Positions 31,964 through 47,767 are shown, numbered from the stretch's first letter. The stretch is 64,000 nt of DNA from IMGVR_UViG_3300021511_000003:1-64000; one strand, 5' to 3'. Made by a program: numbers and translations. The notes: a model not told the origin generated them from the sequence alone.

Positions 31964-34900
31964 TCAGTTATGGTCCACTCCTATGACAGTAAGATAGGAA
32001 TTAAGTAATTTAACTGATTCTGGTGTTGTATCTATTGATTGTTTCTCATCTGTTAAAGTTGAATTGATGAAAGTACGGATGTAAGAATTTTTTAAATCAA
32101 TACAGTCAGATTTAGTAGTAAGAAACTCATGTAAATTACATGGTGCATCATGCCCAATTAAACATGCAGTTTCCATCTCACCACATCTTTGACCGCCTTT
32201 ATTTTTTCTACCACCCAATGGTTGAAGTGTTCTCCTTGCATACGCTCCAATACCTCTTGCAGCTAATTTTTCTTCTGCAATATGAACCATTCTAAAAAAG
32301 TAAATAAACCCAACTGCAACAGGATTTACTAAAGATGCTTTTGATAATGGATCATATATTGGAAATTTAAAATCGCTTTCAACGTATTCTATTGCTTTTT
32401 CAACATGTTGTAATTTACATGATTGAAAGGGTGCTTGTATGATTGTAAAATTTTTCAAAAATTCTGCATTGATTTCTTCTGGTAATTGTTCATTAAATTG
32501 GTTATAATACCAATTGTTATCTGTACAATCTATTACCTCAATAAATCCCAGTAAATATTTCTTTATTTCTTCTTGGTTAATCCCATCTTCAGACATTTTT
32601 ATAATATTTTGTTTGAGTTTATCAACAGCCATAGCCATATGTAATTCATACAACTGGCCAATATTCATTCTCGATATAATACCAAGTGGATTAATGCAAA
32701 TATCAAGATGTCTCCCATCTGGCAACTGTGGCATTTTTTCATGATCAACAATTCTGGAAATTACTCCTTTATTTCCATGTCTATTAGCCATTTTATCACC
32801 AACTTGGACTCTCCTGAAATGAACACCAAACATTTCAACATGTATCCCATTGATTCGTTCACGTTTCTTTTTATATTTCCCAACGAACGAAAATTTATCA
32901 AGACTTTTTTCTCTAATAACTTTTAAAGCATCTTCTTTCGACATAACATCCCGTAGAATTTTATGAAGAAATTTTTCTTTATCTTGTTGATCTGCAAGTT
33001 TATTTTCAACCCACTCTTTGTATTCAGGTACTTCTTCATTCCATGTATTTCCGTATATATTAACTTCGGAAATAATATAATTTTTTCGGGCTTCTAATGG
33101 TACAGTTTCAGAAAATACTGAATATTGTTCATCGGAATTTAATTTTTTCAAGATGGCATAAGGATCGCCAGATTTAATTGTTTCAAGTTCTTCAGGTAAT
33201 GGTTTATACTCACCATTTTGTAATGACAAAAGAACCTTATCTGGTGTTATTGTAAATGATAAATCTTTATAATGAACTGATGTTAAAACGTCTTCCTTTA
33301 CAAGTCTATCTGATATAACAATTCCATCCTCATAATTATTACCGTAATAAACCATAACACCAGTTAATAAATTTTTTCCAATATTAATATTACCATTATT
33401 ACAGAAATTACTTTCTGCAATAATATCCCCTGCTTTAAATTTATCTCCGCTTTTTACATATATATTCATAAAGTCCATATGTTCAACATAGATTTTTCTA
33501 TAACGGATATCAAATATATCGGTATCTTTATCATTATAAATAACAATTATATATTCTTTATCAATATGAACGACTTCCCCATCTTTCTTTGCAATTTTAA
33601 CGAATTGCGTATATGATGTGTATAACCCTTCTGACCCTGAACTGATTAGCGGAGTATCAAATTTTCTAAGCATAATTGACTGTCTCATTTGTGATGCAGC
33701 CATTTGTAGTCGAGTTTGATCATTATGCTTTAAAAATGGAGTCATTGATACCGGTATTGATATTGGATGTTTGTCACAAATTTCATCTGTGAATTTCATC
33801 TTTTCATTGATATGTACATTTGGAAGAATGTTTTGTAATACTCCACAGTTGTCTCTATCTGGTGTATCAACAGGACATAATCTACCGAACATACTTGGGC
33901 AAATATCTCTTAAATGCTTGGGAATGTTCTCCCGTTTGAAGCCTCCGGGTCCAAGAAGACTAATTCTCGATAACTTTGTTAATTCTTCAATTGGATTAAT
34001 TGAGAAATCAAATTGAACAATATCTGAAACGTTACACTCTGAAAGTATTTGAGTTGAATTAATATTAAATTTGGGTTGCCTTGCAGTTCGATTTGCAAAA
34101 CATAGATCGAATATGATTTTTGAAATTTTTGCAATGACAATATATTCAAAGCATCTGATTCTTTTATTCGTAAATAGTGTATCATCAACCGAACCAGTTT
34201 TTAATATTTCAGATATTTCTTCAAGGATTGTTGGGTATGTCATAAATTGTGCTGTAATTAAATCAACTTTTGGTATTAAATCAATTGCGTAAAGAATATC
34301 CTCACCTTTTGATTTTGCATTATACCTAGAATAAAGTCTTCCAAGTTCTAATATAAAATCGTCTATTGTGTAACCAATTGATTCATCAATGTATAATTTT
34401 AGATCTTGTCTTAATATATCAAAGAGGTTATCTCTTTCTTGTTCAATATCTATATCTAAATCATATTTTTCTGTGATACCTTCAATTCCATAATATGCAA
34501 GTAATATTAATGATAAAGGAACTTTTTTACCCATGAAGCTAATTTTAATACGTGGTCCTTCTTTGTCTTTAAATGCCATTATGGTTGCTACATTCGTACG
34601 TAGCTTTATATTTTCTCCCCTTGTTACTATGGGTATATCAAAAAGTTGTAATAAGGGAATTTTTCTTCTTCCATTGATATAAATATAATTTTTATCAACC
34701 AATTTTGGAATGAAAATACTTATATCAATTTCAGAAGATCCTTTTTGTAATTTAATAGCCAATGTTTCTTTGAGTGTTTTGGCCAATTCACCAGATGAAA
34801 ATCGTGAATCTTTTAAACTAATATCATTTATTTGAAATCCGATTTCTTCAACCGGTTTTACTATATTTTGTACAATAGGTAAAATATTTTCATAATCCAA

Positions 34901-34966
34901 TTGTCTTAAAGTGAATATATTATTTTCACTATTTTGTATTACAGCATTCGGGTTGATTATTTTCAA
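31964..34966 (-). CDS. rpoB: Multisubunit RNA polymerase beta subunit (TTG start)
   Basis: GRLCPVDTPD, RLQMAASQMRQ, YGNNYEDG, GDKMANRHGNKGVIS, NPLGIISRMNIGQ, GGQRCGEME; GGAGG RBS. Confidence 0.95.
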   Translation of the reverse strand: MKIINPNAVIQNSENNIFTLRQLDYENILPIVQNIVKPVEEIGFQINDISLKDSRFSSGELAKTLKETLAIKLQKGSSEIDISIFIPKLVDKNYIYINGRRKIPLLQLFDIPIVTRGENIKLRTNVATIMAFKDKEGPRIKISFMGKKVPLSLILLAYYGIEGITEKYDLDIDIEQERDNLFDILRQDLKLYIDESIGYTIDDFILELGRLYSRYNAKSKGEDILYAIDLIPKVDLITAQFMTYPTILEEISEILKTGSVDDTLFTNKRIRCFEYIVIAKISKIIFDLCFANRTARQPKFNINSTQILSECNVSDIVQFDFSINPIEELTKLSRISLLGPGGFKRENIPKHLRDICPSMFGRLCPVDTPDRDNCGVLQNILPNVHINEKMKFTDEICDKHPISIPVSMTPFLKHNDQTRLQMAASQMRQSIMLRKFDTPLISSGSEGLYTSYTQFVKIAKKDGEVVHIDKEYIIVIYNDKDTDIFDIRYRKIYVEHMDFMNIYVKSGDKFKAGDIIAESNFCNNGNINIGKNLLTGVMVYYGNNYEDGIVISDRLVKEDVLTSVHYKDLSFTITPDKVLLSLQNGEYKPLPEELETIKSGDPYAILKKLNSDEQYSVFSETVPLEARKNYIISEVNIYGNTWNEEVPEYKEWVENKLADQQDKEKFLHKILRDVMSKEDALKVIREKSLDKFSFVGKYKKKRERINGIHVEMFGVHFRRVQVGDKMANRHGNKGVISRIVDHEKMPQLPDGRHLDICINPLGIISRMNIGQLYELHMAMAVDKLKQNIIKMSEDGINQEEIKKYLLGFIEVIDCTDNNWYYNQFNEQLPEEINAEFLKNFTIIQAPFQSCKLQHVEKAIEYVESDFKFPIYDPLSKASLVNPVAVGFIYFFRMVHIAEEKLAARGIGAYARRTLQPLGGRKNKGGQRCGEMETACLIGHDAPCNLHEFLTTKSDCIDLKNSYIRTFINSTLTDEKQSIDTTPESVKLLNSYLTVIGVDHN

Positions 34967-35636: not shown

Positions 35637-38348
35637 CTATATAATTTTTTCTCCCTTTAGTATTTTATCCATAACACCAGAATATCTTCCTTCATATAGA
35701 ATTCCTTGTAGAATTGCTCTTTTGGGATTTGAGAACGCCATTGCCAAAATCCAACTTTCTTGGTTGGGTACAGTTTGAATACTATAATACTTTGGAGATA
35801 CTTTTTCACGATTTTCTATCAATCTCCATTTTTTATTATCTCTCCACATTAACTGAGCAACTACAGATTCAAAATGAACATTATGAATATCTTTACCATA
35901 TGCATCAAATAATTCATCAACTATCATGGTATATGTTTTATTTTCGAATTTATGTAATAATTTAGAAACAGATGCAAGATCTCCAATAATATCCTTTTGC
36001 TTCATAGATGTATCATCATCCCCTATTTCTTCACCTTTGATGACTGCTGATCCAGAAGTATGAAATGTACGAAGAACTAATTGAGTTCCTCTCTCACCCA
36101 ATGTTTGAGCTGCTATAATTCCAATAAATCGACTATTAAGAATTTTATATAAATCACCATAACACTTTTTACATATTTTAGGTGATTTACATAATATTGG
36201 GCTTCGTATAAAAATAATTTTTCCGATTATATTTTTATAATTATCTTCTGTGATTTTATATAGGGTTTTATCTTCTTCATTAAGAGCCCATCTGTTAATT
36301 AACATTCGAGCTTTTCTATTATTTTTTACATCAACTTCCAATAAATCTGTTGTACCACAATCGTCAAGATCTTTATCAATCTGTAAATTGGCACATGTAA
36401 AAATAAGTTTTCTTGAAAGATAACCTGATGTTCCTGTATTTAATGCAACGTCCAACAAACCTTTTCTACAACCATATGTTGAATAGAAAAATTCTTTTTG
36501 TGTAAGCCCATCAACTAGAGAATTTTTGATTGGATGGGGTAAAATTTCTCCATCGAAGTTTGAAATAAACCCTCTGGATAAAATTAATTGTTTAACTTGT
36601 CCCCAACTTCCTCTTGCACCTGATTCTATCATATATGAATATTTGAATTTTTCTTTTAACTCATCAATCAAACTTGGATCCGAAAATGCAGTTAATTGAT
36701 TTCTTATACTGCTATGTGAAAAAATATCATGTCTTATTTTCTTTGCTCCTACAATAGGAAAATCTTTTAGTGACATCGTTGTACCATAAAGAGTTGCAAA
36801 TTTAAACCCGGTCTTTTTAATATTATCAAGAATTACAATTGTTTCTTCTTGTGGGTATTTATTTTTAATATCATTCAGGATTCGAAGTAAACCTTTTTCT
36901 GAAATCTTTTTATCGACAACTGGATAATCTTTTGGTAATTGTCTATTAAATTCAGCTCGACCGATTAATAATTTATGTTCTTTATATGTAATTATTTTTT
37001 TTGAAAATTCCTCAGATGTTAAATAATATATTCCCAGAATAATATCTTGACTCGGTGTTGTTGTTAAGTACTCATTAGATGGACTACTTAGATTCGATGT
37101 TATTACAATCTTTTCTTTAATTTCATTTTTGGCGTCATCTGAAATGGGTATATATACAGCCATTTGATCCCCATCAAAATCTGCATTAAATGGAGGACAT
37201 GCGAGCGGATGTATTTTAATAACTGAATCTAATGTAATCTTAATTTTAAAACCTAACATTCCAAGTTTGTGAAGCGAAGGTTGTCTATTTAATATACAGT
37301 ATTCATTTTTTGTTACGTCTTTACAAATTTTTAATAAGACAGGTGTTTTATTTTCAATACATTCGTTTACATAATCAATTGATTTATTGAGTAATTTGAA
37401 TTTACCAAGTTGGATGATTCTTTTTGCTATAGGAAGTTTAAATATTTCAAGTACCATTATATATGGTAACTTACACTCATCCAATGAAAGAGTTGGATCA
37501 GGGGAAATAACTGCACGACCGGAGAAGTCAATTCTTTTTCCAAGAATATTCCCTCGTATCAACCCCTCTTTTTTAGCCATCTTTTCAAGAATTCTTGTAT
37601 AAAGTTCGCTAACGTCTTTTTGTAATTGTTTAAAATATGTATAATAGAGAGCCTTATCACGTTGAATATCAATAATTGTGTCTCTCATAATTTCTTTTTT
37701 AGTTAGTATTTGAACATAATAACGATTGATTTTATCCATTAACTGTTTTGTTTCGCCTGAACTTTTTGATGTTGGTCGTAACTCAGGTGGTAATACAATA
37801 ATCTGATTTATCAATAAATTACTTAGATTATCTTTAATAATTTGCCATTCTGGTGGGTTATCTGGGTTTTCAGCAACAGCTCTGACCAACTCTTCAATTG
37901 CTTCCACTCGTTCCCACTTTTCTGCACCTACTGGTATTTGATCTTCACTTATTGTAACTACATATTCATCTAAAGCTGAGTCTAAATAAAGAATACTTTT
38001 ATCATTTTTCATAAGATCATCGATTGCTTTTTTTAAGCCTTTACCGCCCAAATTAACAATTAGATCATAAAATAATGGATTAACCACAGATATCGGTATT
38101 ACAATTTTTGCGAATGTTTTTCTTCTGGAATCACTATTTATAATAGGAACACCACAAATATCACACACACTACCGGATTTCGATACACCATGATAAATGC
38201 CACATTGGCATGTATAATTTCTCACTGGCCCAAATATTTGTTCAGAGAATAAGCCTTCTGGGTTAAACTTTTTCTTTCCGAATGTTTTTAGAGACGTTAC
38301 TTCGTCTAAGTTTTCACAGAAATCACTATAATTTAAAATCTTAGGCAT
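35637..38348 (-). CDS. rpoC: Multisubunit RNA polymerase beta-prime subunit
   Basis: GLFSEQIFGP...CQCG...CDICG, ILGKRIDFSGRAVI, NRQPSLH, FNADFDGDQM, SGARGS, TSGYLSRKL, QTLGERGTQLVLRTFH. Confidence 0.97.
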   Translation of the reverse strand: MPKILNYSDFCENLDEVTSLKTFGKKKFNPEGLFSEQIFGPVRNYTCQCGIYHGVSKSGSVCDICGVPIINSDSRRKTFAKIVIPISVVNPLFYDLIVNLGGKGLKKAIDDLMKNDKSILYLDSALDEYVVTISEDQIPVGAEKWERVEAIEELVRAVAENPDNPPEWQIIKDNLSNLLINQIIVLPPELRPTSKSSGETKQLMDKINRYYVQILTKKEIMRDTIIDIQRDKALYYTYFKQLQKDVSELYTRILEKMAKKEGLIRGNILGKRIDFSGRAVISPDPTLSLDECKLPYIMVLEIFKLPIAKRIIQLGKFKLLNKSIDYVNECIENKTPVLLKICKDVTKNEYCILNRQPSLHKLGMLGFKIKITLDSVIKIHPLACPPFNADFDGDQMAVYIPISDDAKNEIKEKIVITSNLSSPSNEYLTTTPSQDIILGIYYLTSEEFSKKIITYKEHKLLIGRAEFNRQLPKDYPVVDKKISEKGLLRILNDIKNKYPQEETIVILDNIKKTGFKFATLYGTTMSLKDFPIVGAKKIRHDIFSHSSIRNQLTAFSDPSLIDELKEKFKYSYMIESGARGSWGQVKQLILSRGFISNFDGEILPHPIKNSLVDGLTQKEFFYSTYGCRKGLLDVALNTGTSGYLSRKLIFTCANLQIDKDLDDCGTTDLLEVDVKNNRKARMLINRWALNEEDKTLYKITEDNYKNIIGKIIFIRSPILCKSPKICKKCYGDLYKILNSRFIGIIAAQTLGERGTQLVLRTFHTSGSAVIKGEEIGDDDTSMKQKDIIGDLASVSKLLHKFENKTYTMIVDELFDAYGKDIHNVHFESVVAQLMWRDNKKWRLIENREKVSPKYYSIQTVPNQESWILAMAFSNPKRAILQGILYEGRYSGVMDKILKGEKII

Positions 38349-38575: not shown

Positions 38576-38780
38576 TTTTTTTAGATTCCTTTTTATCGAT
38601 CTTGATTTTTATCTTATCAACTCCTTTGTCAACTATTTCATCTGCTGTATCAGCAGTACGTTCAACCATCAGTTTAATTAATGATCTTATTGATTTTTTA
38701 CCTGTTGTTGCAATATCATCAATAATAATTTTAATCTGTTTTTTCACTTCTTTATTAGTTAATTTTTTTTTATTTTCCAT
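38562..38780 (-). CDS. Small basic hypothetical protein
   Basis: ORF track; GGAG RBS inside the upstream gene. Confidence 0.55.
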   Translation of the reverse strand: MENKKKLTNKEVKKQIKIIIDDIATTGKKSIRSLIKLMVERTADTADEIVDKGVDKIKIKIDKKESKKNEKD

Positions 38781-39127
38781 GCTCCTAACACCTCTTGTTT
38801 TTTATATTGTATTTCATCCCAAGGTGTAAAGTAACAGTCATCTAAATTAAAGCATAATAACATATTAGTAATCATATTTTTAGACTTGTTCGTTAAATTA
38901 TATTTTCGTAAACTATGTGGTATACAAAACTCTCCACTTTTTGGTATTGCATTTGGGTGTGGATTATCTAATATAACCATATCAATTTTACCATTAACAG
39001 TTTTAACAATAAAACCATCAACTTCAAATTTATTTGCTAGTTTCGTAATTGTATATATTTCATTTTTATATATTAATTTCCTTGGTTTGATAAATTCGGT
39101 TATTTCATGATTTTTTATTATCATCAT
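38759..39127 (-). CDS. Small putative E2/UBC-like protein
   Basis: HPNAIPKSGEFCIP resembles the E2 signature HPN-x(7)-C with one extra residue; coupled to the upstream ThiF gene by ATGA overlap. Confidence 0.5.
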   Translation of the reverse strand: MMIIKNHEITEFIKPRKLIYKNEIYTITKLANKFEVDGFIVKTVNGKIDMVILDNPHPNAIPKSGEFCIPHSLRKYNLTNKSKNMITNMLLCFNLDDCYFTPWDEIQYKKQEVLGAWKIKKN

Positions 39128-39984
39128 GCAGCTCCGGTTTCAGGAATTAACTCGACATAAACATTACTGTTTTCATTGTATAGTGATATTACAAAATTAT
39201 TAAAATCTGTCTGACAAGATACTAAAGACATAAATAATGTAATTAAATCTTTACCATTTTTCAAAGAGTTCATTGGAATCACTTTTTCAGAAACAGGAAA
39301 CATTCTACTTCCAAGAAATACAGTAACATCTTTATCTTTGTTTATATCCATTATTGGGACAATTTTATCTGGCAAATTTAAAAATTTTTCATTCCCCAGA
39401 ATGTTTTCATATACTATATCATAATTTTTATTATCAATATGCTTGACATAATCGAGTTCATATTTTTGAATAGATTTACTTTTTATAAGAGTTGTAATTA
39501 TATCACAATGAATCAACATAGAAATAATTGAAGCAGCATACCTCAAATCATTTCTTGATAATTCTAAAATATATTTTCCAGCCTGTAAGCAAGAGTATGT
39601 AACATTTTTTCTAAAGTCACCCATTAAATATCTTGATGATATGTAAAATCTTGCATCAATCTCTTTTTGTCGATCATAGGTATAATCTCTACAATCAATT
39701 ACTAAATCCTCTTTTATAAGTTTTGTTTTACCTTCCTTATATTTACTTTGAAATGCACATATTTCAAGATCAGGATTTTGATCATGTAGAATATCTTTTA
39801 GAGCTTCGACTTTTGGGGCACCTATATCGACTTGTCGGTAAATCGAATTCTTCAAATTCTTTTTCTCAACTATATCGTGGTCTAATATAACTATCTTCTC
39901 AATTCCTTCCAAATTAGCTATAGCTTCTGCTACAAATCCACCGAGTGTTCCTAACCCAATTATTACTATATTTTTATACACCAC
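39124..39984 (-). CDS. Divergent ThiF/E1-like protein with C-terminal extension
   Basis: IIGLGTLGG, DHDIVEKKNL, GAPKVEAL, IDCRD; lacks the canonical NxxRQ arginine; ends VELIPETGAA. Confidence 0.8.
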   Translation of the reverse strand: MVYKNIVIIGLGTLGGFVAEAIANLEGIEKIVILDHDIVEKKNLKNSIYRQVDIGAPKVEALKDILHDQNPDLEICAFQSKYKEGKTKLIKEDLVIDCRDYTYDRQKEIDARFYISSRYLMGDFRKNVTYSCLQAGKYILELSRNDLRYAASIISMLIHCDIITTLIKSKSIQKYELDYVKHIDNKNYDIVYENILGNEKFLNLPDKIVPIMDINKDKDVTVFLGSRMFPVSEKVIPMNSLKNGKDLITLFMSLVSCQTDFNNFVISLYNENSNVYVELIPETGAA

Positions 39985-40674: not shown

Positions 40675-41145
40675 TTAACCTTTCTTCCCTGCTGGTTTCA
40701 GGAATTCCAGATTGTCGCCGGAGTTTAGAACATACTCCGCATCGACTTCTTTGCCATTAACCAGTCCTGTAGAAAGACGATCAACATTCAGAACTTCACG
40801 AAGGAAGTCACCAACTTCTTTTACGCTCTTACCGGCAACTGGGAAATTACCAGAAGATGCTCCACAAGATACATGAATGGTTGTGGTGGCACGGGAACCG
40901 AAAGGGGCATCGGGTTTAGTAATTGTACTTTGACCGGTAAACTGAATACCGGTAAGTTTTTCCATTGCCTTTTCGGGAGCTTTGCTAATTGTTGAACCAC
41001 CGCCATAACGAGCGAGAATTGCATTGATAACGGTATTTTTATTTTTTTTGGAAACCCCCGGGATATTCAATTCATCAATACACATTCTTTTAAGGGCTTT
41101 GGATGTTTTGGCTTCAAGTTCTTCTCTTTTGAAAATTCTTCCCAT
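40675..41145 (-). CDS. Ubiquitin-like (beta-grasp) modifier with N-terminal HeH/Rho-N-like domain
   Basis: C-terminal ~70 aa IHVSCG...VAGKSVKEV...LVNGKEV...VLNSGDNLEFLKPAGKKG-COOH; N-terminal LEAKTSKALKRMC...IPGVSKKNKNTVINAIL. Confidence 0.8.
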   Translation of the reverse strand: MGRIFKREELEAKTSKALKRMCIDELNIPGVSKKNKNTVINAILARYGGGSTISKAPEKAMEKLTGIQFTGQSTITKPDAPFGSRATTTIHVSCGASSGNFPVAGKSVKEVGDFLREVLNVDRLSTGLVNGKEVDAEYVLNSGDNLEFLKPAGKKG

Positions 41146-41161: not shown

Positions 41162-41848
41162 TTAATGTTTCACGATTCGAATTTTTGCATCTGCAGTCAT
41201 TTTTGTTAAATCAAAATAAACTTCAGATCGTTCATACTCGTCTTTGACTACAACGTTGTAGAAAGACCAACACATCAAAGTTGCAACCCCCAGATTTGCA
41301 AAGTATAGTTGGGGGTCAGAATGAGCAAGCTCATCACAACTCATTTCTTCTGGTAATTTATCATCTGGCTCTGCTATTTCTGGATGATATGCACATAGAT
41401 CAGGAGTTAAGTCTTTTCCATCTCTTCTAATATAAATCTGCACATTACCATCTGTATAGTCATTGCCACCAGAAATTAAAATAACATTTTGTAAATTTTT
41501 ACAGTAATTGGATACAATCATTCTGGTTTTGTGATTATCAACACATAGAAATACAATATAGTCTTCTTTAATAACTTCTTCTACAGTTTTTTCATTTACA
41601 AAAGCTTCGAATGCATTAAACTCTAGTCCATCAAATTTCATTTCAAGTTCGGTAGCTTTTATATCAGCTTTATTTCCGATACGAAAAAACTCTTGTCGTT
41701 CATAATTTTTTTGTTCATACTCGTCTCCATCCACCAATAGTAATTCTGCATCAAGATCTTTTGAATAGTTTAAAAATCTACATAATCTCTCAACTAATAT
41801 AGAACCAACTCCACCAAGTCCAATAACTGATATAAACATGTCAGACAT
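41162..41848 (-). CDS. ThiF/E1 family activating enzyme
   Basis: VIGLGGVG, DGDEYEQKNYERQ, LCVDNHKTR, SGGND...GNVQ, MSC (candidate catalytic Cys), QLYFAN. Confidence 0.92.
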   Translation of the reverse strand: MSDMFISVIGLGGVGSILVERLCRFLNYSKDLDAELLLVDGDEYEQKNYERQEFFRIGNKADIKATELEMKFDGLEFNAFEAFVNEKTVEEVIKEDYIVFLCVDNHKTRMIVSNYCKNLQNVILISGGNDYTDGNVQIYIRRDGKDLTPDLCAYHPEIAEPDDKLPEEMSCDELAHSDPQLYFANLGVATLMCWSFYNVVVKDEYERSEVYFDLTKMTADAKIRIVKH

Positions 41849-43386
41849 TATAAAACCTCTCTTTTAAATACTTTTTTAAACATAGCCATGAGACCATTTG
41901 GTTGTTCTGATATTGGTATTATGGTTGATCCTGGTTCCGGTATTCTTTGAATAGGTTCATCCTCCTTTTTAGCAGCTTGAGTTATCTCATCTACTTCTCG
42001 TGTTAAAAGCACTCCTTTATTTGTATATGGTTGTTCAGGTTTTTCTATACTATTAATTGGAGTGTAACAGAAAGGACAAGTTTCATCACTATTGTTTAAG
42101 TGAAAGCCATTACCACATTCTTTACATTTAATATATGAAGATTCTTCAATTTCTTTTGTAGAATCTTTTTTAAACATGTGGTCATATTCATCGCCTGGTA
42201 TATATTGATCTGACAGAACTTCCTCTTTATCTAATAGAATAAGATGTTCATTTGTATTACATGTGGAACATTGGAGTTCGAATCCTTCTTCCTCTTTAAC
42301 AATCTCGCCACAATTTTTACAAAAATACATCTCTTCAAAATCATCTTCCTCAATCTCAGAAGTAAGTTTGCAAAGTCTATGAGTGCATGTGGCACATGGT
42401 ACAAAGTCACCATCCTGAGTATGTGGAGGGAACTTTAAAGGTGTTGGTATCACTGGTTTAATACCTGGCTTGGAAGCACGTGAATTAATATTTTTTCCAT
42501 TTTGCTTCCAAATAGAACGATCATAATTAAAACCCCAACCATCATTATATGCATGAGCAGCATATCCATACCATCCAGCGTATCCATTACGATAACTTGG
42601 GAAGGTGTAAACACCCTTTTCTACCATACTCATCCAGTTTTTATTGAAAATACGATCCTCATCTGAGCATACTATATCATATCTACGATCAAATTTTTTA
42701 CGCTCGAATGGATATTTGGGCTTGACATCTACATCTTCAATAAGTTTTCCATTTTTCCATTTATAAACTGTTTTAACTGATTTATTATCAATGGAATTAG
42801 TTTCAGACATACACACTATATTATCAATATATTTTTCAGGTTCTATCATTTGTCGAAACCCGTTTGATACAATTGATGAAGAAAGGCTGGGATATTTATC
42901 ACCTAAATCTCCAAATGTCAGATGAAGTCCATCAAAATGTTCTTCATCACTATCATCAACTCCTGAATGAAACGCTGACATGTTTCCATGACTATGAATA
43001 GTTCCAATCATTGTATATCCATCAATAGTCAAACCTTTATCATAATCACAGCTAGCACCTGCGACTTTTTGATGTGGCGGAACAATTTTATGTTCTCCCG
43101 TTTGTTCATTATAGAACAATAGAACGATTGCTTCTGATCTGTTATATGTATCATATACTTCTCGAAAAAAGCTTATAACTTTTGCAATATATTTTCCAGG
43201 AATCTTTGTAATATGCATTCGTGCACTTGATGCCACACTTTCAAGAATTGAGATATTTTTAACCGGTGCAATACTTTCCATTACACCAAGTTTCTTTTTA
43301 AGAAATACTCCCTCCTTACCAATAATATAATAAATATCATCTTTAGGCATTTCATTTTGCCCATCATTCAGGACTACTTTAAACAT
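41848..43386 (-). CDS. JAB/MPN metalloprotease with C-terminal zinc ribbons
   Basis: SEAIVLL, GTIHSHGNMSAFHSGVDDSDE; CATC, CKNC...CSTC, CKEC...CPFC. Confidence 0.9.
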   Translation of the reverse strand: MFKVVLNDGQNEMPKDDIYYIIGKEGVFLKKKLGVMESIAPVKNISILESVASSARMHITKIPGKYIAKVISFFREVYDTYNRSEAIVLLFYNEQTGEHKIVPPHQKVAGASCDYDKGLTIDGYTMIGTIHSHGNMSAFHSGVDDSDEEHFDGLHLTFGDLGDKYPSLSSSIVSNGFRQMIEPEKYIDNIVCMSETNSIDNKSVKTVYKWKNGKLIEDVDVKPKYPFERKKFDRRYDIVCSDEDRIFNKNWMSMVEKGVYTFPSYRNGYAGWYGYAAHAYNDGWGFNYDRSIWKQNGKNINSRASKPGIKPVIPTPLKFPPHTQDGDFVPCATCTHRLCKLTSEIEEDDFEEMYFCKNCGEIVKEEEGFELQCSTCNTNEHLILLDKEEVLSDQYIPGDEYDHMFKKDSTKEIEESSYIKCKECGNGFHLNNSDETCPFCYTPINSIEKPEQPYTNKGVLLTREVDEITQAAKKEDEPIQRIPEPGSTIIPISEQPNGLMAMFKKVFKREVL

Positions 43387-45958
43387 TAATCATACTCCTT
43401 TCATCATTTATGAATTCAAATATTGAAGAATTACAGGTATAAGTATGTCCGTGGCAATTTGTCCAACCTCTTTTAGTACCAATTTCATTCTGTATTCTTT
43501 GTGAAATTCTTGGATTTAATATATAATCGAATTTGTAGTTTACAGCAGTATATTTATCCAGTAAAGTATACCTTGGAATTCGTGTATAATATTTCAAGTC
43601 TAATATATTTAACTTATGATTACCGTTTATCTTAAACACAATGCAACCGGCATCGGTTTGATATTCATTCTCACCAACAATAATATCACCAGGTTGAAAT
43701 TTAATTTTTGCAATATCAATGGGGGCATGTGAAATAGTTGCCCATTTTTTATTCGTCATTGAAATTTTCTTGAACTTATTGATTACATCACTGTACCATA
43801 AAGTACAACAATTTGAACATAGTACTAATGGATCAGACCCACCTGTATCTGTTATAAAACCAATGATAATATGTGTATCTTTTTTAAGGAAATGTAAAAT
43901 ACCAGTCTCTTGAGCTTGAATTTTCATCCCTGCTGTAAGGTTGCCATATACATTTGTAATATGCCTGATTTTTCCTGTAAATATTGATCCGGTTGGTCCA
44001 TCAACATACTTTATTTGGTGTAGTATACCTTCCTTATCAGCTAATATAAAATGTATATCTCCTCTCTCTTCATTAAATTTAAATCCTTGAATTATTTTTA
44101 TCGAAAGCATATTTATTGGATTTTCCCAATCAGAAGTAACAACTTTGTCTCCTATAGCAAAGTCAATGTTCATATCATAACTTTCAACTCTGAATTTATC
44201 ATCGTTCAAAATATATTTTTTTATTTCCAATGGTGATGGAATTGCGGCAGATTGATATCTATTATCAATTGCGACACCATTTGGAGTACCAAATGTTGTA
44301 CCTTCCATGGGATCATGTGTATTTCGTCTCGACATTATTAATGTACGACCGACTCTAACAAGTGGCGGTAATGGTTTGATAGTTTCTGTATCAAATATCA
44401 ATGAATTGTGTATTGTTGAATCTATGTTTATTCTAAAATAGTCATTATTTAAGTTATCATCTATACTTCGAAATTGTAGTTTTAATCTATCTGTATGATC
44501 AACATTAAAATCATCATATTTTACCAAATAACCACTGAGTAGGGGGGTTTCATTTGTTGCACCATTTATAAATAAATAAGTTTTATCCTTTGTTAGTTTA
44601 AGACCATTATATACTGGGTTTGATAAATTATAAACTTTCGCTTCTAAATGTTCAAGAATATAGAAACCATCACCAAAACATGCTTCGTGATATCCTTCTT
44701 GATTAAGACGAATATAACCAACCTTCTTATATACAGTATTACCGATACCATTTTTCATTTGAACAATGTCATCCTTTTTAACAATATCACCATTTTTCAA
44801 CGTACCTTCTTTTTCGTATCGAAGTTCTATAGTTTTTTCTTTCAGAAATTTTGAAAATGCTTTTGTGTTTTTATAAATAATCAAACGACCATCTTCTCTT
44901 TCAACTCTGAAATATTTGATACCTCCACTATTTTCAAAACTAATAAGCGAATTGATATAACACATACGTTTATTATTTTTAATAAGGAATGGATCTCCTA
45001 CATGAATATAAAATTTGTTATCCAGAAATACACCCTCTGCAACATCATAGTATAACTTATATTTCTTTTTGGCTCGCTTTGTTGGTTTGGCAACTTTACC
45101 TGTATCCATTTTTGTTGAAAACATTTGAGTGAGGGATTTATATTCAACTTGTTTTGTGGTTTTATTATTATGTCGTTTTATTTCATCAATGGCTTGACCA
45201 AAATTCATTGGAATTTTAATCCAGTCAACATTATAAATAAACATAGGATTTAATTTAGATAAACCCTGCCATTCCATATATGTACTAACACCAGCAACTT
45301 TTTCATATGCATGATAGTTATACATGTAGTCATTATTAAACTCAGCACCCCAGAATACATTAATTGCTTTTTCAACTGCTGCATTCAATGACTCAGATAT
45401 TCCACTTGATTTAGTACCAAAACAAATATACTGACTTTCTGAAATATTTGGTAATGGTATTTTAAGAAGATAATCTGATAATCCTGTTAATCTTGCAACT
45501 CTCAAAAATGCCTGACCACATCGTATATCATAAAAATCATCGATATATAAAATAAAGATAACATATGGGAATGCCAAATTAAATGACGGTACTTCATCAA
45601 TGTTGGTTGTAAAATTTTCACTATAATCATATTTTTCAAGTCTACCACTACGTTTTAGTATATTAGTTTCACGTTGAAAATTTAAATCGATTTTAATTGT
45701 TCTAAACGCTGGTGGTTCTTCAATAGCAATGATATACCCACCTTGTACTCTTTCCATAAATCTACAATTTGGTGGTAAAACATTCATTGATTGATCGTTT
45801 ATAGTAAGTGCAATACGTTTAAGATAATCTATAGTAAGAAGGGATTTCTTATGAATAACTGGTAATGAATCATTATTTAATATTGAATCCTTGTATTCAG
45901 ATCTATATAAATTCGTATACTTTGAGTTTATTCTTATTTCATTTTTTAAATTCATCAT
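43379..45958 (-). CDS. Prokaryotic E2-like conjugating enzyme (PRTRC-B/Prok-E2 type) with ~600-aa C-terminal extension
   Basis: LAFPYVIF...LLKIPLPNISESQYICFG...VFWGAEFNND within the first ~230 aa; adjacent to JAB, E1 and Ubl genes. Confidence 0.75.
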   Translation of the reverse strand: MMNLKNEIRINSKYTNLYRSEYKDSILNNDSLPVIHKKSLLTIDYLKRIALTINDQSMNVLPPNCRFMERVQGGYIIAIEEPPAFRTIKIDLNFQRETNILKRSGRLEKYDYSENFTTNIDEVPSFNLAFPYVIFILYIDDFYDIRCGQAFLRVARLTGLSDYLLKIPLPNISESQYICFGTKSSGISESLNAAVEKAINVFWGAEFNNDYMYNYHAYEKVAGVSTYMEWQGLSKLNPMFIYNVDWIKIPMNFGQAIDEIKRHNNKTTKQVEYKSLTQMFSTKMDTGKVAKPTKRAKKKYKLYYDVAEGVFLDNKFYIHVGDPFLIKNNKRMCYINSLISFENSGGIKYFRVEREDGRLIIYKNTKAFSKFLKEKTIELRYEKEGTLKNGDIVKKDDIVQMKNGIGNTVYKKVGYIRLNQEGYHEACFGDGFYILEHLEAKVYNLSNPVYNGLKLTKDKTYLFINGATNETPLLSGYLVKYDDFNVDHTDRLKLQFRSIDDNLNNDYFRINIDSTIHNSLIFDTETIKPLPPLVRVGRTLIMSRRNTHDPMEGTTFGTPNGVAIDNRYQSAAIPSPLEIKKYILNDDKFRVESYDMNIDFAIGDKVVTSDWENPINMLSIKIIQGFKFNEERGDIHFILADKEGILHQIKYVDGPTGSIFTGKIRHITNVYGNLTAGMKIQAQETGILHFLKKDTHIIIGFITDTGGSDPLVLCSNCCTLWYSDVINKFKKISMTNKKWATISHAPIDIAKIKFQPGDIIVGENEYQTDAGCIVFKINGNHKLNILDLKYYTRIPRYTLLDKYTAVNYKFDYILNPRISQRIQNEIGTKRGWTNCHGHTYTCNSSIFEFINDERSMINV

Positions 45959-45963
45959 AACAT

Positions 45964-46344
45964 TTATTCACCTCGTAGAAATTTATATCGTTTGGCATAT
46001 TCAGTTAATATCATTTCAGGTCTATTATCATTGATTGACCATACTCTTTGCCTCTTTATTGAGAGAGTTTTTGATTCTCTAAAAATATATTCTTTTCTAG
46101 ATGTTACAAATAATACAGCTAACCAAACATCTTCACTTTCACGTTCTAATGAAAGAAAAGCAATTTCATTTGTTATTCTTCCAGGAACTTCCAGTGTAAG
46201 AAATAGATTTGGTCCCTTTGGAATTATTTCAGTATGTATAATATTTTCTTCTTCTTCTTCAGAAATCATATCACATAATTGTCTTATTTCATCAATATTA
46301 TTATCACCTTTGATTTCTGAAAGTAATTTATTTAAAATTCCCAT
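45964..46344 (-). CDS. Hypothetical protein
   Basis: ORF track; AGGAG RBS. Confidence 0.65.
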   Translation of the reverse strand: MGILNKLLSEIKGDNNIDEIRQLCDMISEEEEENIIHTEIIPKGPNLFLTLEVPGRITNEIAFLSLERESEDVWLAVLFVTSRKEYIFRESKTLSIKRQRVWSINDNRPEMILTEYAKRYKFLRGE

Positions 46345-46366: not shown

Positions 46367-46717
46367 TTACTTGTAAGGTGTTCTTGGCGGTTTGGATTTT
46401 TTTGTGTAGTATCTCATTGTTTTAGTATCCATCCATTCAACTCCATCAAACGGAACAGAACGCCACGCTTTTTTATCTAGATCATAAACATGCATTATTT
46501 TATTTTTTTGAATCAAACTAAGTATATTTTGAATATTAACACCTTTTGGGTGATCCTTCTTTGGAATTTTTGTAAAATCCAATGTACATCTCATAATACG
46601 ATTAGTTTTATCTTTTTTTTCAAACTTGATAACAACTTCTTTTTCATCATAAACTTTTTTCCAAAATGTGATCGCACTCATAATTACATTGCTATCTAAA
46701 GGTTTTTGATCTACCAT
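46367..46717 (-). CDS. WYL_2/DUF2693-like SH3-fold protein
   Basis: VIKFEKKDKTNRIMRCTL...VYDLDKKAWRSV. Confidence 0.7.
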   Translation of the reverse strand: MVDQKPLDSNVIMSAITFWKKVYDEKEVVIKFEKKDKTNRIMRCTLDFTKIPKKDHPKGVNIQNILSLIQKNKIMHVYDLDKKAWRSVPFDGVEWMDTKTMRYYTKKSKPPRTPYK

Positions 46718-46720
46718 AAT

Positions 46721-47767
46721 TTATTCTCCCCGTTTATCAGAGTGTACTAACGTATTTACTCCTTCTTCTGTTTCATCAAGATATTGACTCATCATCAAGC
46801 ATGAATGATTACAGGATTTACAATAATATTGCTTGTCTGACACTATTGCATTGAATACATACGCAGATATAAGATGTGGATCTGTTTTATCAAACAACTG
46901 TGTTACATTCAATTCTGGACTCGAAACACCCTTGATTCTCAAACATAATCTAATTGTTCCATCTGCATCAATTGAAATATTATGCAAACCTTGTTCCAAT
47001 TTGCAATCATAATTTGTTGGTAATGTATTAAACATTTTTGGGATTAAAATGTCTTTCATATGAACATATAAAGATAGATTGTTTACAATATTAACCAACT
47101 CCTCTGCTAATCTGAATGTTGGTTGAACTAATGTTTTTATATCCCAAACATTTGAAAAGTCGTAAAATGGACTTTTTGCAATATCAACAAATGTAATATC
47201 GCTATATATGTTATTCATACTCAACTGTTCTACGAGTTTATACAATAGATGTTGATTATGATTCATAACTGTTATTTCAGCCACAACATCCTTAACTTTA
47301 CCTGCTTCCTGAATCTCCTTCAATCTTTTGAGACCTTCAATGCTTTTCATTACTCGATCTTCATCTGCACCGATTTCATTAAAGATTGGATCCACTGAAC
47401 TCGTAAAACCTTCTATATGATCAACCTTATCAAATAACTTTTTGATTAATGGTTGAATTGTTGGGGTGTTGTTCGTAATAATGGTATAGTAGATTTCATT
47501 GTCATTACAATAATTTATAATATCAGGTAGATCAGGTCTTAATAATGGTTCACCACCATAAAATATATGAAACACATCTGGATTGTGAACCTTAAATGCT
47601 GCAAGGGTTTTAATAACAACTTCTGTTGGCATTTCATTTTTGATATAATGTTTCATATCAGGATATAGATATGGTTTTCCATTATAGTTTCTCACAATAG
47701 CACAATATTCACATTCAAGATTACATTTTCTTGTGAGAAGCCAATTTACAATTCTTACTTGACTCAT
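46721..47767 (-). CDS. Radical SAM enzyme with SPASM/twitch-like C-terminus
   Basis: CNLECEYC, YGGEPLLR, C...ISIDADGTIRLC, CKSCNHSC. Confidence 0.92.
   Translation of the reverse strand: MSQVRIVNWLLTRKCNLECEYCAIVRNYNGKPYLYPDMKHYIKNEMPTEVVIKTLAAFKVHNPDVFHIFYGGEPLLRPDLPDIINYCNDNEIYYTIITNNTPTIQPLIKKLFDKVDHIEGFTSSVDPIFNEIGADEDRVMKSIEGLKRLKEIQEAGKVKDVVAEITVMNHNQHLLYKLVEQLSMNNIYSDITFVDIAKSPFYDFSNVWDIKTLVQPTFRLAEELVNIVNNLSLYVHMKDILIPKMFNTLPTNYDCKLEQGLHNISIDADGTIRLCLRIKGVSSPELNVTQLFDKTDPHLISAYVFNAIVSDKQYYCKSCNHSCLMMSQYLDETEEGVNTLVHSDKRGE

What the first reader, a model, noticed from the sequence alone, without database searches (positions are those of the whole stretch)
43379..45958. Giant E2-like protein with a long tail of possible SH3/KOW-like barrels
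Seen: the E2-like core occupies only about the first quarter of 859 aa. The rest has recurring [IVFL]-x-x-G/D-D-x-[VI] strand starts (IHVGDPF, VKKDDIV, FAIGDKV, LTAGMKI, FQPGDII). Established: prokaryotic Ubl systems often lack an E3. Inference: tandem small beta-barrels could be a built-in substrate-recognition (E3-like) module that defines the targets.
Basis: inference. Interest (0 to 1): 0.6.

Follow-up and report, generated by a model that had tools for sequence, protein, structure and literature searches.

The report
Phage E2 enzyme with beta-barrel tail
A jumbo phage from marine sediments encodes an 859-residue protein with a divergent ubiquitin-conjugating (E2) domain followed by six or seven small SH3/KOW/Tudor-like barrels; it sits in a conserved operon with an E1, a JAB peptidase and a ubiquitin-like protein, and its layout resembles the eukaryotic E2/E3 hybrid UBE2O.

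Summary
The ORF is real (43379-45958, minus strand, 859 aa). Residues 58-265 are a divergent E2/UBC domain. All 58 family members scanned hit Pfam Prok-E2_D, structure searches return almost only E2s, and Asn171 and Cys179 are invariant in 220 homologs. Residues 283-859 are mostly beta (42% strand). They split into six segments that match PRC-, KOW/BAH-, SH3- and Tudor-like barrels, plus one unassigned segment. The barrels are not detectably related to each other by sequence.

The gene is translationally coupled to an intact JAB peptidase and a minimal ThiF E1. Downstream lies a highly conserved Rho_N-beta-grasp protein ending in AGKKG, with or without one capping residue. This module is also found in a distant phage whose E2 has only a ~110-residue tail, so the long tail is a lineage-specific addition.

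The fold prediction is supported. The E3-like target-selection role stays an inference, backed by analogy to UBE2O. Docking of the system's own partners, or nucleic-acid tethering, remain open. I rate it a new variant of a known kind and moderately interesting.

The parts
43379..45958 (-). Whole gene, 859 aa (P0001): N-terminal unit, E2-like domain, then a beta-barrel tail
   Evidence: ORF and translation. More than 120 full-length homologs of ~860 aa. 267 representative clusters with the same architecture.
45788..45958 (-). Residues 1-57: three strands plus a helix, weakly PC4/Sub1/YdbC/PurA-like (ssDNA-binding fold)
   Evidence: Secondary structure. VIA wide search Z 3.0-3.6 over 48-55 aligned residues at rmsd 4-6 A. 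This is only a weak lead.
45164..45787 (-). Residues 58-265: divergent E2/UBC-like domain with an insertion at ~95-125
   Evidence: Pfam Prok-E2_D hits in 58 of 58 members, best E 3.8e-7; P0001 itself scores 17.9 bits against a cutoff of 25. The VIA wide list is almost all E2/UEV, Z up to 4.8 over 111-136 aligned residues at rmsd 4.2-6.0 A (rows 1-10). ESM Atlas TM 0.65 to a phage-rich cluster carrying Prok-E2_D.
45422..45454 (-). Residues 169-179, LPN-x7-C: putative active site with Asn171 and Cys179
   Evidence: N171 and C179 are conserved in 220 of 220 full-length homologs. The Asn-to-Cys spacing of 8 is read directly from the sequence. It equals the HPN-to-Cys spacing of canonical E2s, which is my own knowledge.
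45113..45163 (-). Residues 266-282: Lys-rich linker with low model confidence
   Evidence: pLDDT dips at 266-269. Median net charge is +3.5 over residues 266-300.
44819..45112 (-). B1, residues 283-380: PRC-barrel-like domain plus a helix (contains IHVGDPF)
   Evidence: VIA wide: reaction-centre H subunit, PRC-barrel 3htr, MTH1859 and CdpB at Z 3.8-4.6. Also matches the KOWx part of Spt5.
44630..44815 (-). B2, residues 382-443: KOW/BAH-like barrel (contains LKNGDIV and VKKDDIV)
   Evidence: Spt5 KOW at Z 4.0-4.4, rmsd 1.9-2.7 A, 50-55 aligned residues. Rsc2 and AIPP3 BAH at Z 3.7-4.2.
44213..44629 (-). B3 and B4, residues 444-582: beta-rich and the least conserved part. B3 resembles an SH3/MBT-like barrel. 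B4 has no independent match.
   Evidence: L3MBTL MBT repeats at Z 3.0-3.2. BirA C-terminal domain at Z 3.7 over residues 455-524. Conservation is 0.34-0.36. Boundaries are approximate.
43958..44212 (-). B5, residues 583-667: Tudor-like barrel (contains FAIGDKV)
   Evidence: SETDB1 Tudor, DNMT1 and UHRF1 TTD at Z 2.4-3.4, rmsd 2.4-2.9 A, ~60-70 aligned residues.
43724..43957 (-). B6, residues 668-745: SH3/KOW-like barrel and the most conserved segment of the protein. It carries the D704...P710-x2-L-C-S-N-x2-T-x-W signature (contains LTAGMKI).
   Evidence: DUF1653 3be3 at Z 5.2, OSF SH3 at 5.0, S4e KOW at 4.9, FeoA at 4.7. Conservation is 0.69. N716 is conserved in 220 of 220, S715 in 217, T719 in 218, and C714 in only 202.
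43511..43723 (-). B7, residues 746-816: SH3/Tudor-like barrel (contains FQPGDII)
   Evidence: BAHCC1 TTD at Z 4.5, BIN1 SH3 at 4.1, RecD SH3-like at 4.0. UBR5 barrel at Z 3.9. Q755, G757 and D758 are conserved in 216-218 of 220.
43379..43510 (-). Residues 817-859 plus the stop codon: short C-terminal beta element with no fold assignment
   Evidence: Secondary structure. P816 and R817 are near-invariant.
41848..43386 (-). JAB/JAMM peptidase, 512 aa, with a C-terminal multi-Zn-ribbon extension. Its start overlaps the E2 gene's stop by 8 nt.
   Evidence: Pfam Prok-JAB E 7.5e-5 plus weak C1/PHD/Zn-ribbon hits. The HxH-x7-S-x2-D motif is conserved in 4 loci. The Zn-ribbon part is present only in the window and L003.
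41162..41848 (-). Minimal E1-like ThiF adenylase, 228 aa, overlapping the JAB stop by 1 nt
   Evidence: Pfam ThiF E 6.7e-17. Conserved next to the E2 and JAB genes in L002, L003 and L005.
40675..41145 (-). Ubiquitin-like protein candidate, 156 aa: Rho_N helical domain, linker, then a ThiS/TGS-like beta-grasp ending in AGKKG
   Evidence: Weak Pfam Rho_N and TGS hits. 382 homologs found. Of the best 120, 36 end at the Gly and 84 have one extra residue, mostly Cys. The 100-aa L005 homolog hits ThiS at E 0.0095.

Best explanation
The gene encodes the conjugating enzyme (E2) of a phage-borne ubiquitin-like (Ubl) modification module. This module belongs to the conserved core genome of a clade of jumbo myoviruses from marine sediments and vents.

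Shown by computation:
- The N-terminal third is a divergent UBC-fold domain with an invariant Asn-x7-Cys centre.
- The remaining ~580 residues are six SH3-superfold barrels (PRC-, KOW/BAH-, SH3/MBT-, Tudor-, SH3/KOW- and SH3/Tudor-like) plus one unassigned beta segment.
- The gene is translationally coupled to an intact JAMM peptidase and a minimal ThiF E1.
- A highly conserved beta-grasp protein lies downstream, and its C-terminal Gly is either free or capped by one residue.

Inferred mechanism:
1. The JAB peptidase trims the cap.
2. ThiF adenylates the Ubl's terminal Gly.
3. The Ubl passes to Cys179 of the E2.
4. The E2 transfers it directly to targets, with no separate E3 and no second cysteine relay.
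5. The conserved, net-basic barrel array acts as a built-in recruitment platform that brings a conserved target (or the site of action) to the active site. UBE2O's five SH3-like domains do this for its UBC domain.

The target is unknown.
For: E2 domain:
- Prok-E2_D is hit in 58 of 58 members, best E 3.8e-7.
- VIA hit lists are almost entirely E2/UEV folds and include the bacterial Cap2, CdnG-E2 and BubCD entries.
- ESM Atlas gives TM 0.65 to a Prok-E2_D-bearing phage cluster.
- N171 and C179 are conserved in 220 of 220 homologs.

Barrels:
- Model pLDDT is 88.9.
- Foldseek matches Spt5 (E 2e-6), SETDB1 Tudor (probability 0.98) and UBE2O (E 9e-4).
- The tail is 42% strand and 12% helix.

Module:
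- The order E2, JAB, ThiF, Ubl is kept at 27% identity (L002), in L003 and in the short-tailed lineage L005.
- The JAMM motif is intact.
- The Ubl ends in AGKKG with zero or one further residue. Within the same phages the Ubl is far more conserved (63-81% identity) than the E2 (27-54%).

Tail as an accessory module:
- Relatives of 241-621 aa share the E2 core.
- The tail profile was found only behind this E2, in 267 clusters, of which the 150 best were inspected.
- The tail is as conserved as the E2 and has invariant polar residues, which points to a conserved ligand.
- C714 is F, L, M or A in 18 of 220, so there is no second catalytic Cys, as in E2/E3 hybrids.

UBE2O precedent: five SH3-like domains form the substrate cavity facing the UBC cysteine (PMC12818219).

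E2-Ubl pairing (complex prediction, full protein plus Ubl residues 80-156): the verdict was WEAK support. The score was 0.55 and the best of 3 controls was 0.00. That mark was reached by 58 of 80 solved complexes and 2 of 110 mismatched pairs. At 0.60 or under it was reached by only 7 of those 80 and by both mismatches that passed. The runs agree in at least 73% of contacts and the partner's pLDDT is at least 76. No interface was reported.
Against: - No biochemical or expression data exist. All sequencing runs holding this DNA are DNA metagenomes.
- The E2 assignment is divergent. P0001 is below Pfam's cutoff (17.9 against 25 bits), Foldseek on the isolated domain has no hit at E<=0.001, and VIA Z stays below 5, a range the tool calls middling. 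The His of the HPN motif is absent.
- Single-barrel Z scores of 3-5 show fold class only.
- UBE2O's platform is N-terminal and acidic. This one is C-terminal and basic, with median net charge +13.
- The minimal E1 lacks any E2-recruiting domain, so the tail may instead hold the E1, JAB or Ubl.
- A second ThiF and a possible mini-E2 lie downstream, so the cognate E2 of the Ubl is not settled.
- The JAB protein's Zn-ribbon extension could be an E3 in this phage.
- The complex prediction is only weak support and does not locate the interface.
Confidence: 0.5

Rival explanations
1. The barrel tail is an assembly scaffold for the pathway's own parts. It docks the minimal E1 (which lacks a ubiquitin-fold or E2-binding domain), the JAB peptidase and/or the Ubl. 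In effect it replaces the covalent E1-E2 fusion seen in CBASS Cap2. Targets would be chosen elsewhere or not chosen specifically.
For: ThiF#1 is only 228 aa, an adenylation domain alone. The E2 resembles Prok-E2_D, the Cap2-type E2, which Pfam describes as usually fused to an E1 (that description is my recollection; the hits are). E2, JAB and ThiF#1 are translationally coupled. The tail is strongly conserved alongside the very conserved Ubl. The full-length protein plus the Ubl gave weak support for binding: score 0.55, best control 0.00, with the same calibration counts as stated in the best explanation and no interface reported.
Against: The short-tailed relative P0128 has the same JAB, minimal ThiF and Ubl partners but only ~110 residues after the E2 core. 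A 580-residue scaffold is therefore not needed for the core chemistry. No E1-tail or JAB-tail prediction was run.
Confidence: 0.22
2. The tail, together with the N-terminal PC4-like unit, tethers the enzyme to nucleic acid or to the transcription machinery. Conjugation is thereby confined to DNA-, RNA- or RNA-polymerase-associated proteins. This would be localisation rather than recognition of a particular substrate.
For: The best fold matches are KOW, PRC, Tudor, BAH and S4e-type barrels, which often bind nucleic acids or polymerase and ribosome surfaces. The tail is net basic, with median charge +13 and pI 9.0. Residues 1-57 weakly resemble PC4/PurA ssDNA binders. The Ubl carries a Rho_N domain. 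The module always sits between recombination/replication genes and the phage RNAP beta-prime/beta genes.
Against: No Pfam KOW, Tudor or S1 hit was reported at E<=0.1. SH3-like barrels bind proteins just as often. Gene order within one clade may simply be inherited. The PC4 similarity is weak (Z 3.6, rmsd ~5 A).
Confidence: 0.18
3. The module does not conjugate proteins. The ThiF/beta-grasp pair is a sulfur-carrier or other small-molecule activation system linked to the neighbouring radical-SAM and PTPS genes (nucleotide or DNA modification). The E2-like protein would serve a non-canonical or purely structural role.
For: ThiS/MoaD-like beta-grasp proteins paired with ThiF and JAB act in sulfur transfer in many prokaryotes (Iyer 2006, PMC1779556). 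A radical-SAM gene lies ~760 bp upstream in the same orientation and a PTPS gene lies nearby in the related loci L002 and L003. The short-form locus sits beside 7-deazaguanine genes.
Against: The Asn-x7-Cys centre is invariant in 220 of 220 members and E2 and JAB always co-occur with the pair, which is the signature of conjugation-type operons (row 6d of Iyer 2006). No sulfurtransferase or rhodanese was seen among the neighbours scanned. A one-residue cap after the Gly fits Ubl processing.
Confidence: 0.08

Closest known systems
UBE2O (eukaryotic E2/E3 hybrid; PDB 7un3; PMC12818219)
   Same: One polypeptide combines a UBC-fold catalytic domain with an array of SH3-like barrels, and there is no conserved second catalytic cysteine. 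UBE2O appeared among Foldseek's matches (E 9e-4). In UBE2O the barrels form the substrate-binding cavity.
   Different: There is no detectable sequence homology. The barrels lie C-terminal to the E2 here and N-terminal in UBE2O. There are six or seven barrels of mixed subtype rather than five. The platform is net basic here and acidic in UBE2O. The global superposition is poor (Z 3.2, rmsd 20.8 A). The resemblance is best read as convergence.
CBASS type II Cap2 (E2-E1 fusion) with Cap3 (JAB)
   Same: The E2 domain's only Pfam match is Prok-E2_D, the Cap2-type E2. Cap2 7to3_A and CdnG-E2 8hsb_B appear in the fold lists. A JAB peptidase is adjacent. The downstream ThiF#2 matches Cap2 E1 halves at E 7e-14.
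   Different: E1 and E2 are separate genes. No match to a CD-NTase model was found among the ten neighbours scanned against PADLOC. A dedicated beta-grasp Ubl is present in place of a cyclase C-terminus. It is phage-encoded and part of the core genome, not a bacterial defence island. Cap2 has no barrel tail.
Bil (BilABCD) and the 'Ubl + JAB + E1-like + E2-like' operons of Iyer et al. 2006 (row 6d)
   Same: The same four parts are present: Ubl, E2, JAB and E1.
   Different: PADLOC finds no BilB-like match for the E2 and only a marginal BilD hit for ThiF#1 (E 0.0094). The Ubl has a Rho_N domain. The E2 is ~5 times larger. The module is carried by a virus rather than used as bacterial defence against viruses.
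Spt5/NusG multi-KOW arrays and SETDB1/L3MBTL tandem Tudor/MBT readers
   Same: They are the best structural matches for the tail as a string of small barrels.
   Different: The similarity is at fold level only, with 5-17% identity and no Pfam KOW, Tudor or MBT hit. Aromatic-cage or KOW sequence motifs were not examined.

Membership tests
E2/UBC superfamily (Pfam Prok-E2_D, PF14460) | UBC fold (helix, four-stranded antiparallel sheet, active-site loop, C-terminal helices) | tested here: met
   The top 24 rows of the unbiased VIA search with the isolated domain are almost all E2/UEV chains. The top ten rows have Z 4.4-4.8 over 111-136 aligned residues at rmsd 4.2-6.0 A. ESM Atlas gives TM 0.65 over 188 aligned residues at rmsd 2.2 A to a cluster with Prok-E2_D. 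The scores are modest, and Foldseek on its own is not significant.
E2/UBC superfamily (Pfam Prok-E2_D, PF14460) | Profile match above the family's curated threshold | tested here: inconclusive
   P0001 scores 15.8-17.9 bits against a cutoff of 25. All 58 members hit this family and no other consistently, best E 3.8e-7. Precomputed PF14460 hits exist for ~15 homologs.
E2/UBC superfamily (Pfam Prok-E2_D, PF14460) | Conserved catalytic Cys preceded by the HPN-type Asn | tested here: met
   N171 and C179 are conserved in 220 of 220 homologs with spacing 8. The His of HPN is not present: positions 168-170 are P/N, L/F/M and variable.
E2/UBC superfamily (Pfam Prok-E2_D, PF14460) | Forms a Ubl~Cys thioester after E1 activation | not testable with these tools
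   This needs biochemistry. The only weak computational support for E2-Ubl contact is score 0.55 against a best control of 0.00.
CBASS type II (Cap2/Cap3) | E2 and E1 fused in one protein, operon with a CD-NTase and an effector | tested here: not met
   E2 and both ThiF genes are separate ORFs. PADLOC returned only E1-E2/BilD-type hits for the two ThiF proteins among the ten neighbours, with no CD-NTase or effector model. The rest of the 223-kb record was not scanned for a cyclase.
Bil system (BilABCD) | BilB-type E2 and BilD-type E1 recognised by the Bil models | tested here: not met
   No PADLOC hit for P0001. BilD hits ThiF#1 only at E 0.0094.
UBE2O-type E2/E3 hybrid | UBC domain plus multiple SH3-like domains in one chain, with no second catalytic Cys | tested here: met
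   C714, the only conserved tail cysteine, is replaced by F, L, M or A in 18 of 220 members.
UBE2O-type E2/E3 hybrid | Homology and shared layout (N-terminal SH3 array, acidic substrate groove) | tested here: not met
   No sequence match to any PDB chain. The array is C-terminal and net basic. This is an analogue, not a member.
UBE2O-type E2/E3 hybrid | Barrel array binds substrates and is needed for E3-independent transfer | not testable with these tools
   The targets are unknown and the host is uncultured.
KOW / Tudor / SH3 sequence families | Significant profile match to the Pfam families | tested here: not met
   No such Pfam hit at E<=0.1 for the whole protein. There is only fold-level similarity.

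The most novel reading that the evidence does not exclude
A clade of jumbo phages carries, as core genes, a complete and self-sufficient ubiquitin-like conjugation cascade. Its E2 would be a true E2/E3 hybrid that arose independently of UBE2O and BIRC6. The barrel array would select a conserved host or phage nucleic-acid-associated target, such as the transcription or replication machinery, and the enzyme would tag it with a Ubl that itself carries a Rho_N nucleic-acid-binding domain. That would be ubiquitin-like modification used by a virus of prokaryotes during infection, rather than by the host in defence.
Probability: 0.25. Interest if true: 0.8.

Novelty: new variant of a known kind. Interest (0 to 1): 0.6.

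Why it matters
Prokaryotic E1/E2/JAB/Ubl operons have so far been characterised as bacterial anti-phage defences (CBASS Cap2/Cap3, Bil, Bub). Here the same machinery is a conserved core module of a large clade of uncultured jumbo phages, with at least 267 clusters at 50% identity. Its E2 has acquired a ~580-residue array of SH3-like barrels.

If the array selects targets, this would be an independent invention of the E2/E3-hybrid solution known from UBE2O. It would also give a compact and testable system (E1 228 aa, Ubl 156 aa, one E2) for asking how E2s achieve specificity without an E3, and what a phage gains by Ubl-tagging proteins. Natural length variants of 241, 377, 621 and 859 aa supply truncation series for such experiments.

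Tried and rejected
1. Second catalytic cysteine (HECT/RBR-like relay) at C714 in the most conserved motif. Rejected: C714 is F, L, M or A in 18 of 220 homologs, while the neighbouring S715, N716 and T719 are (near-)invariant.
2. A zinc site in the tail. Rejected: only C714, C718 (157 of 220), H744 (151) and H836 (175) are semi-conserved, so there is no four-ligand set.
3. Barrels as recent tandem duplicates. Rejected: all 28 profile-profile comparisons among the eight tail segments gave at most 14% probability. The recurring motif is a fold-level hairpin signature.
4. The short relative's ~110-residue tail matched none of the barrel profiles (at most 4.7% probability).
5. Sequence-level searches that found nothing:
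   - PHROGs and PADLOC for P0001.
   - tblastn against 50,697 phage records.
   - IMG/VR pattern scan.
   - PDB profile searches with the whole family and with the E2 domain. The only hit was a spurious Protein M match at E 0.038.
   - Protein-language-model look-alikes for residues 583-859. The Atlas's own model is poor and gave TM below 0.3.
6. Literature searches for a described phage E1/E2/JAB system of this type found none. This is absence in the held library only.
7. Virion or structural role. Disfavoured: the gene lies in the replication/transcription block, not in the sheath/baseplate/terminase block at 1-24 kb.
8. Expression evidence. None is obtainable because every holder run is a DNA metagenome.

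Full report
**1. Setting**

The window is the first 64 kb of a 223-kb IMG/VR virus record with ~30% GC. CheckV estimates it as 71% complete.
- It encodes a tail sheath, baseplate wedge and large terminase at 1-24 kb.
- It also encodes full-length RNA polymerase beta and beta-prime, topoisomerase II subunits, SbcCD and a helicase. So it is a jumbo myovirus-type phage.
- Near-identical DNA occurs in marine-sediment and hydrothermal-vent metagenomes from several studies. No RNA run holds it.

**2. The observation**

The ORF at 43379-45958 (minus strand) is intact and encodes 859 aa.
- The five quoted heptads are at residues 318, 393, 600, 674 and 754.
- The strict pattern occurs 4 times against 0.29 expected, and the loose pattern 7 times against 0.52. 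No shuffle out of 2000 reached these counts, although the pattern was chosen after seeing the sequence.
- More than 120 clusters at 90% identity align over the full length at 27-54% identity, all ~835-890 aa and all unnamed.

**3. The N-terminal third**

Sequence evidence:
- Pfam gives only a sub-threshold Prok-E2_D hit for P0001 (15.8-17.9 bits, cutoff 25).
- Every one of 58 diverse members hits that family and no other consistently, best E 3.8e-7.

Structural evidence:
- The domain folded alone has pLDDT 92.
- An unbiased alignment against 48,161 PDB representatives returns an almost pure list of E2/UEV chains for residues ~58-250. The top ten rows have Z 4.4-4.8 over 111-136 aligned residues at rmsd 4.2-6.0 A.
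- The list includes bacterial Cap2, CdnG-E2 and BubCD entries. The whole-protein search gave the same picture.
- Foldseek alone is not significant, with top hit UBE2L6 at E 0.1. The domain is therefore strongly diverged, with an insertion at ~95-125.
- The ESM Atlas holds phage-dominated clusters of 267-397-aa proteins matching residues 54-269 at TM 0.58-0.65. One of them is annotated Prok-E2_D.

Active site:
- The sequence LPN-x7-C (residues 169-179) has the Asn-to-Cys spacing of canonical E2s.
- N171 and C179 are conserved in all 220 full-length homologs, down to 24% identity.

Residues 1-57 form an extra three-strand-plus-helix unit that weakly resembles PC4/PurA ssDNA binders (Z 3.0-3.6).

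**4. The tail**

The full-length model is confident (mean pLDDT 88.9, pTM 0.62). From residue 283 it is 42% strand and 12% helix.

Foldseek against the PDB is led by Spt5 multi-KOW chains (E 2e-6), the SETDB1 triple Tudor domain (probability 0.98) and UBE2O 7un3 (E 9e-4).

DALI-like alignments assign the pieces as follows:

| Segment | Residues | Best fold matches | Z |
|---|---|---|---|
| B1 | 283-380 | PRC barrel, KOWx | 3.8-4.6 |
| B2 | 382-443 | KOW/BAH (rmsd ~2 A) | 4.0-4.4 |
| B3 | within ~444-525 (matched ranges 441-569) | SH3/MBT-like | 3.0-3.7 |
| B4 | 526-582 | none | - |
| B5 | 583-667 | Tudor | 2.4-3.4 |
| B6 | 668-745 | SH3, S4e-KOW, FeoA, DUF1653 | 4.7-5.2 |
| B7 | 746-816 | SH3/Tudor | 3.9-4.5 |

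- These Z values are near what 55-80-residue domains can reach, but they establish only the fold class.
- I had no access to coordinates, so the boundaries come from secondary structure and the aligned ranges.
- Each quoted motif lies on the strand-turn-strand hairpin that opens one barrel.
- The barrels show no significant profile similarity to one another (at most 14% probability). They are not recent repeats.
- No enzyme-like fold was found in the tail.

**5. Conservation of the tail**

- The tail is as conserved as the E2 domain. Mean top-residue frequency is 0.50 for the tail and 0.57 for the E2. B6 is the most conserved part of the protein at 0.69, and B3/B4 the least at ~0.35.
- Near-invariant polar residues include D322, R665, D704, S715, N716, T719, Q755, D758 and R817.
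- C714, which was invariant in the first 58 sequences, is hydrophobic in 18 of 220. It is therefore structural and not a relay cysteine.
- The tail is net basic, with median charge +13 and pI 9.0.

**6. Distribution of the tail**

- An exhaustive profile search of 1.84 billion representatives with the tail alone found 267 clusters, 226 of them at E<=1e-30.
- In the 150 listed, the tail always begins at residue ~260-320 of 820-960-aa proteins, or the hit is a fragment.
- The 117 weaker hits were not listed, so other architectures cannot be excluded.
- The E2 core does occur with shorter tails:
  - P0128 (377 aa) is 32% identical over residues 60-265 with the LPN...C motif kept.
  - Atlas clusters have 267-397 aa.
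  - BFVD holds uncharacterised Caudovirales proteins of 241-621 aa at probability 1.00.

**7. The operon**

Layout:
- The E2 stop overlaps the start of a 512-aa JAB protein by 8 nt.
- The JAB stop overlaps a 228-aa ThiF by 1 nt.
- Downstream come, in order:
  - a 156-aa protein with Rho_N and a TGS/ThiS-like beta-grasp;
  - a 188-aa unknown;
  - a second ThiF of 286 aa, which matches the E1 half of CBASS Cap2 at E 7e-14;
  - a 122-aa ORF;
  - RNAP beta-prime and beta.
- This order is kept in contigs whose E2 is 27% and 43% identical (L002 and L003).

In the distant short-tail phage L005 the order is:
- E2 (377 aa), JAB (294 aa) and ThiF (227 aa);
- a 137-aa ORF;
- a 100-aa beta-grasp protein.

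Partner proteins:
- The JAMM motif HxH-x7-S-x2-D is intact in all four loci.
- The beta-grasp protein is much more conserved than the E2 (63-81% identity).
- It ends in AGKKG in every case. Of 120 homologs, 36 stop at the Gly and 84 carry one more residue, Cys in 81. This is the precursor layout expected for a Ubl trimmed by a JAB peptidase.

Binding test:
- A complex prediction of the full E2 protein with Ubl residues 80-156 gave WEAK support.
- The score was 0.55 and the best of 3 controls was 0.00.
- That mark was reached by 58 of 80 solved complexes and 2 of 110 mismatched pairs. At 0.60 or under it was reached by only 7 of the 80 and by both mismatches that passed.
- The runs agree in at least 73% of contacts, the partner's pLDDT is at least 76, and no interface was reported.

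**8. Interpretation**

The best-supported reading is a phage-encoded Ubl conjugation cascade: JAB trimming, ThiF adenylation, then an E2~Ubl thioester on C179.

The barrel array is a lineage-specific, conserved add-on:
- It is dispensable for the core chemistry in other lineages.
- It has a conserved surface.
- It lacks a second catalytic Cys.

So the simplest mechanistic model is direct transfer from the E2 to a partner held by the array. This is what has been shown for UBE2O, whose five SH3-like domains build a substrate cavity facing the UBC cysteine (PMC12818219).

The analogy is structural and probably convergent. The array here is on the other side of the E2, is basic rather than acidic, and shares no sequence similarity.

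The rival readings are given in their own section:
- a scaffold for the minimal E1, the JAB and the Ubl;
- tethering to nucleic acid or RNA polymerase;
- a non-conjugating sulfur-carrier system.

Only experiments can separate them.

**9. Novelty**

The operon type (Ubl, JAB, E1-like, E2-like) has been known since Iyer et al. 2006 (PMC1779556). Bacterial versions act in anti-phage defence.

I found no description of this phage family or of an E2 with a barrel tail in the held literature. All database members are "hypothetical protein". Hence my rating: a new variant of a known kind.

- The costly exhaustive protein search was used once, on the tail. The family scans had left the tail open, and the claim of a fixed architecture rests on it.
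- The domains were searched separately, as advised.
- Only genetic code 11 was needed.
- No sequence was taken for human, and no reads were laid.

Noticed in passing
window 38759-39127 (-) and 39124-39984 (-); L002:16124-16468; L003:16960-17322: The 286-aa second ThiF matches the E1 half of CBASS Cap2 (E 7e-14). It is followed, overlapping by 4 nt, by a 114-122-aa ORF with a conserved HPNA-x-P-x2-GE[FL]C motif, the canonical E2 HPN...Cys signature. This may be a second, minimal E1/E2 pair. The motif occurs only once per locus and is absent from the short-form locus L005. ThiF#2 ends in a conserved TG[AG]A.
   Followed up: partly
window 40675-41145 (-): The Ubl candidate fuses an N-terminal Rho_N (helix-extended-helix, nucleic-acid-binding type) domain to the beta-grasp through a variable Ala/Pro-rich linker. 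The L005 homolog lacks Rho_N. The C-terminus is AGKKG plus zero or one residue, Cys in 81 of 120.
   Followed up: partly
window 41848-43386 (-), residues ~330-470: The JAB peptidase carries a C-terminal extension with several CxxC pairs and weak Pfam C1/PHD/zf-C2HC5/Zn-ribbon hits. It is present in the window and L003 but absent in L002 (334 aa) and L005 (294 aa). It could be a treble-clef or RING-like module.
   Followed up: partly
window 46367-46717 (-), 46721-47767 (-), 45964-46344 (-): Directly upstream in the same orientation lie a radical-SAM enzyme (348 aa), a WYL_2 Sm/SH3-like barrel protein (116 aa, phrog_1086) and a 126-aa unknown. This order is conserved in L002 and L003, and a PTPS (QueD-like) gene lies a few kb further upstream in those two loci. 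A link to the Ubl module was not tested.
   Followed up: no
L005:11649-15514 and L005:119-1018: The short-tail relative's contig carries a full 7-deazaguanine set (GTP cyclohydrolase I, PTPS/QueD, radical-SAM QueE-like, QueC) and a PAPS-reductase-like gene within 10 kb of its E2/JAB/ThiF/Ubl module.
   Followed up: no
window 31964-34966 (-) and 35637-38348 (-): The phage encodes unsplit, full-length RNA polymerase beta (1000 aa) and beta-prime (903 aa) genes immediately downstream of the Ubl module. The same arrangement holds in L002 and L003.
   Followed up: no
window 45788-45958 (-), residues 1-57 of P0001: The N-terminal three-strand-plus-helix unit before the E2 core weakly resembles PC4/Sub1/YdbC/PurA ssDNA-binding folds (Z 3.0-3.6).
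   Followed up: partly
homologs P0029 and P0081: Two family members are deposited as proteins of archaeal MAGs (Candidatus Pacearchaeota, Candidatus Thorarchaeota). P0081 lies on a 255-kb contig. These are probably phage contigs binned into MAGs, or they hint at archaeal hosts.
   Followed up: no
window 17953-21495 (-): A 1180-aa ORF next to the terminase and virion genes has no Pfam hit and only weak PHROG matches to families of unknown function.
   Followed up: no
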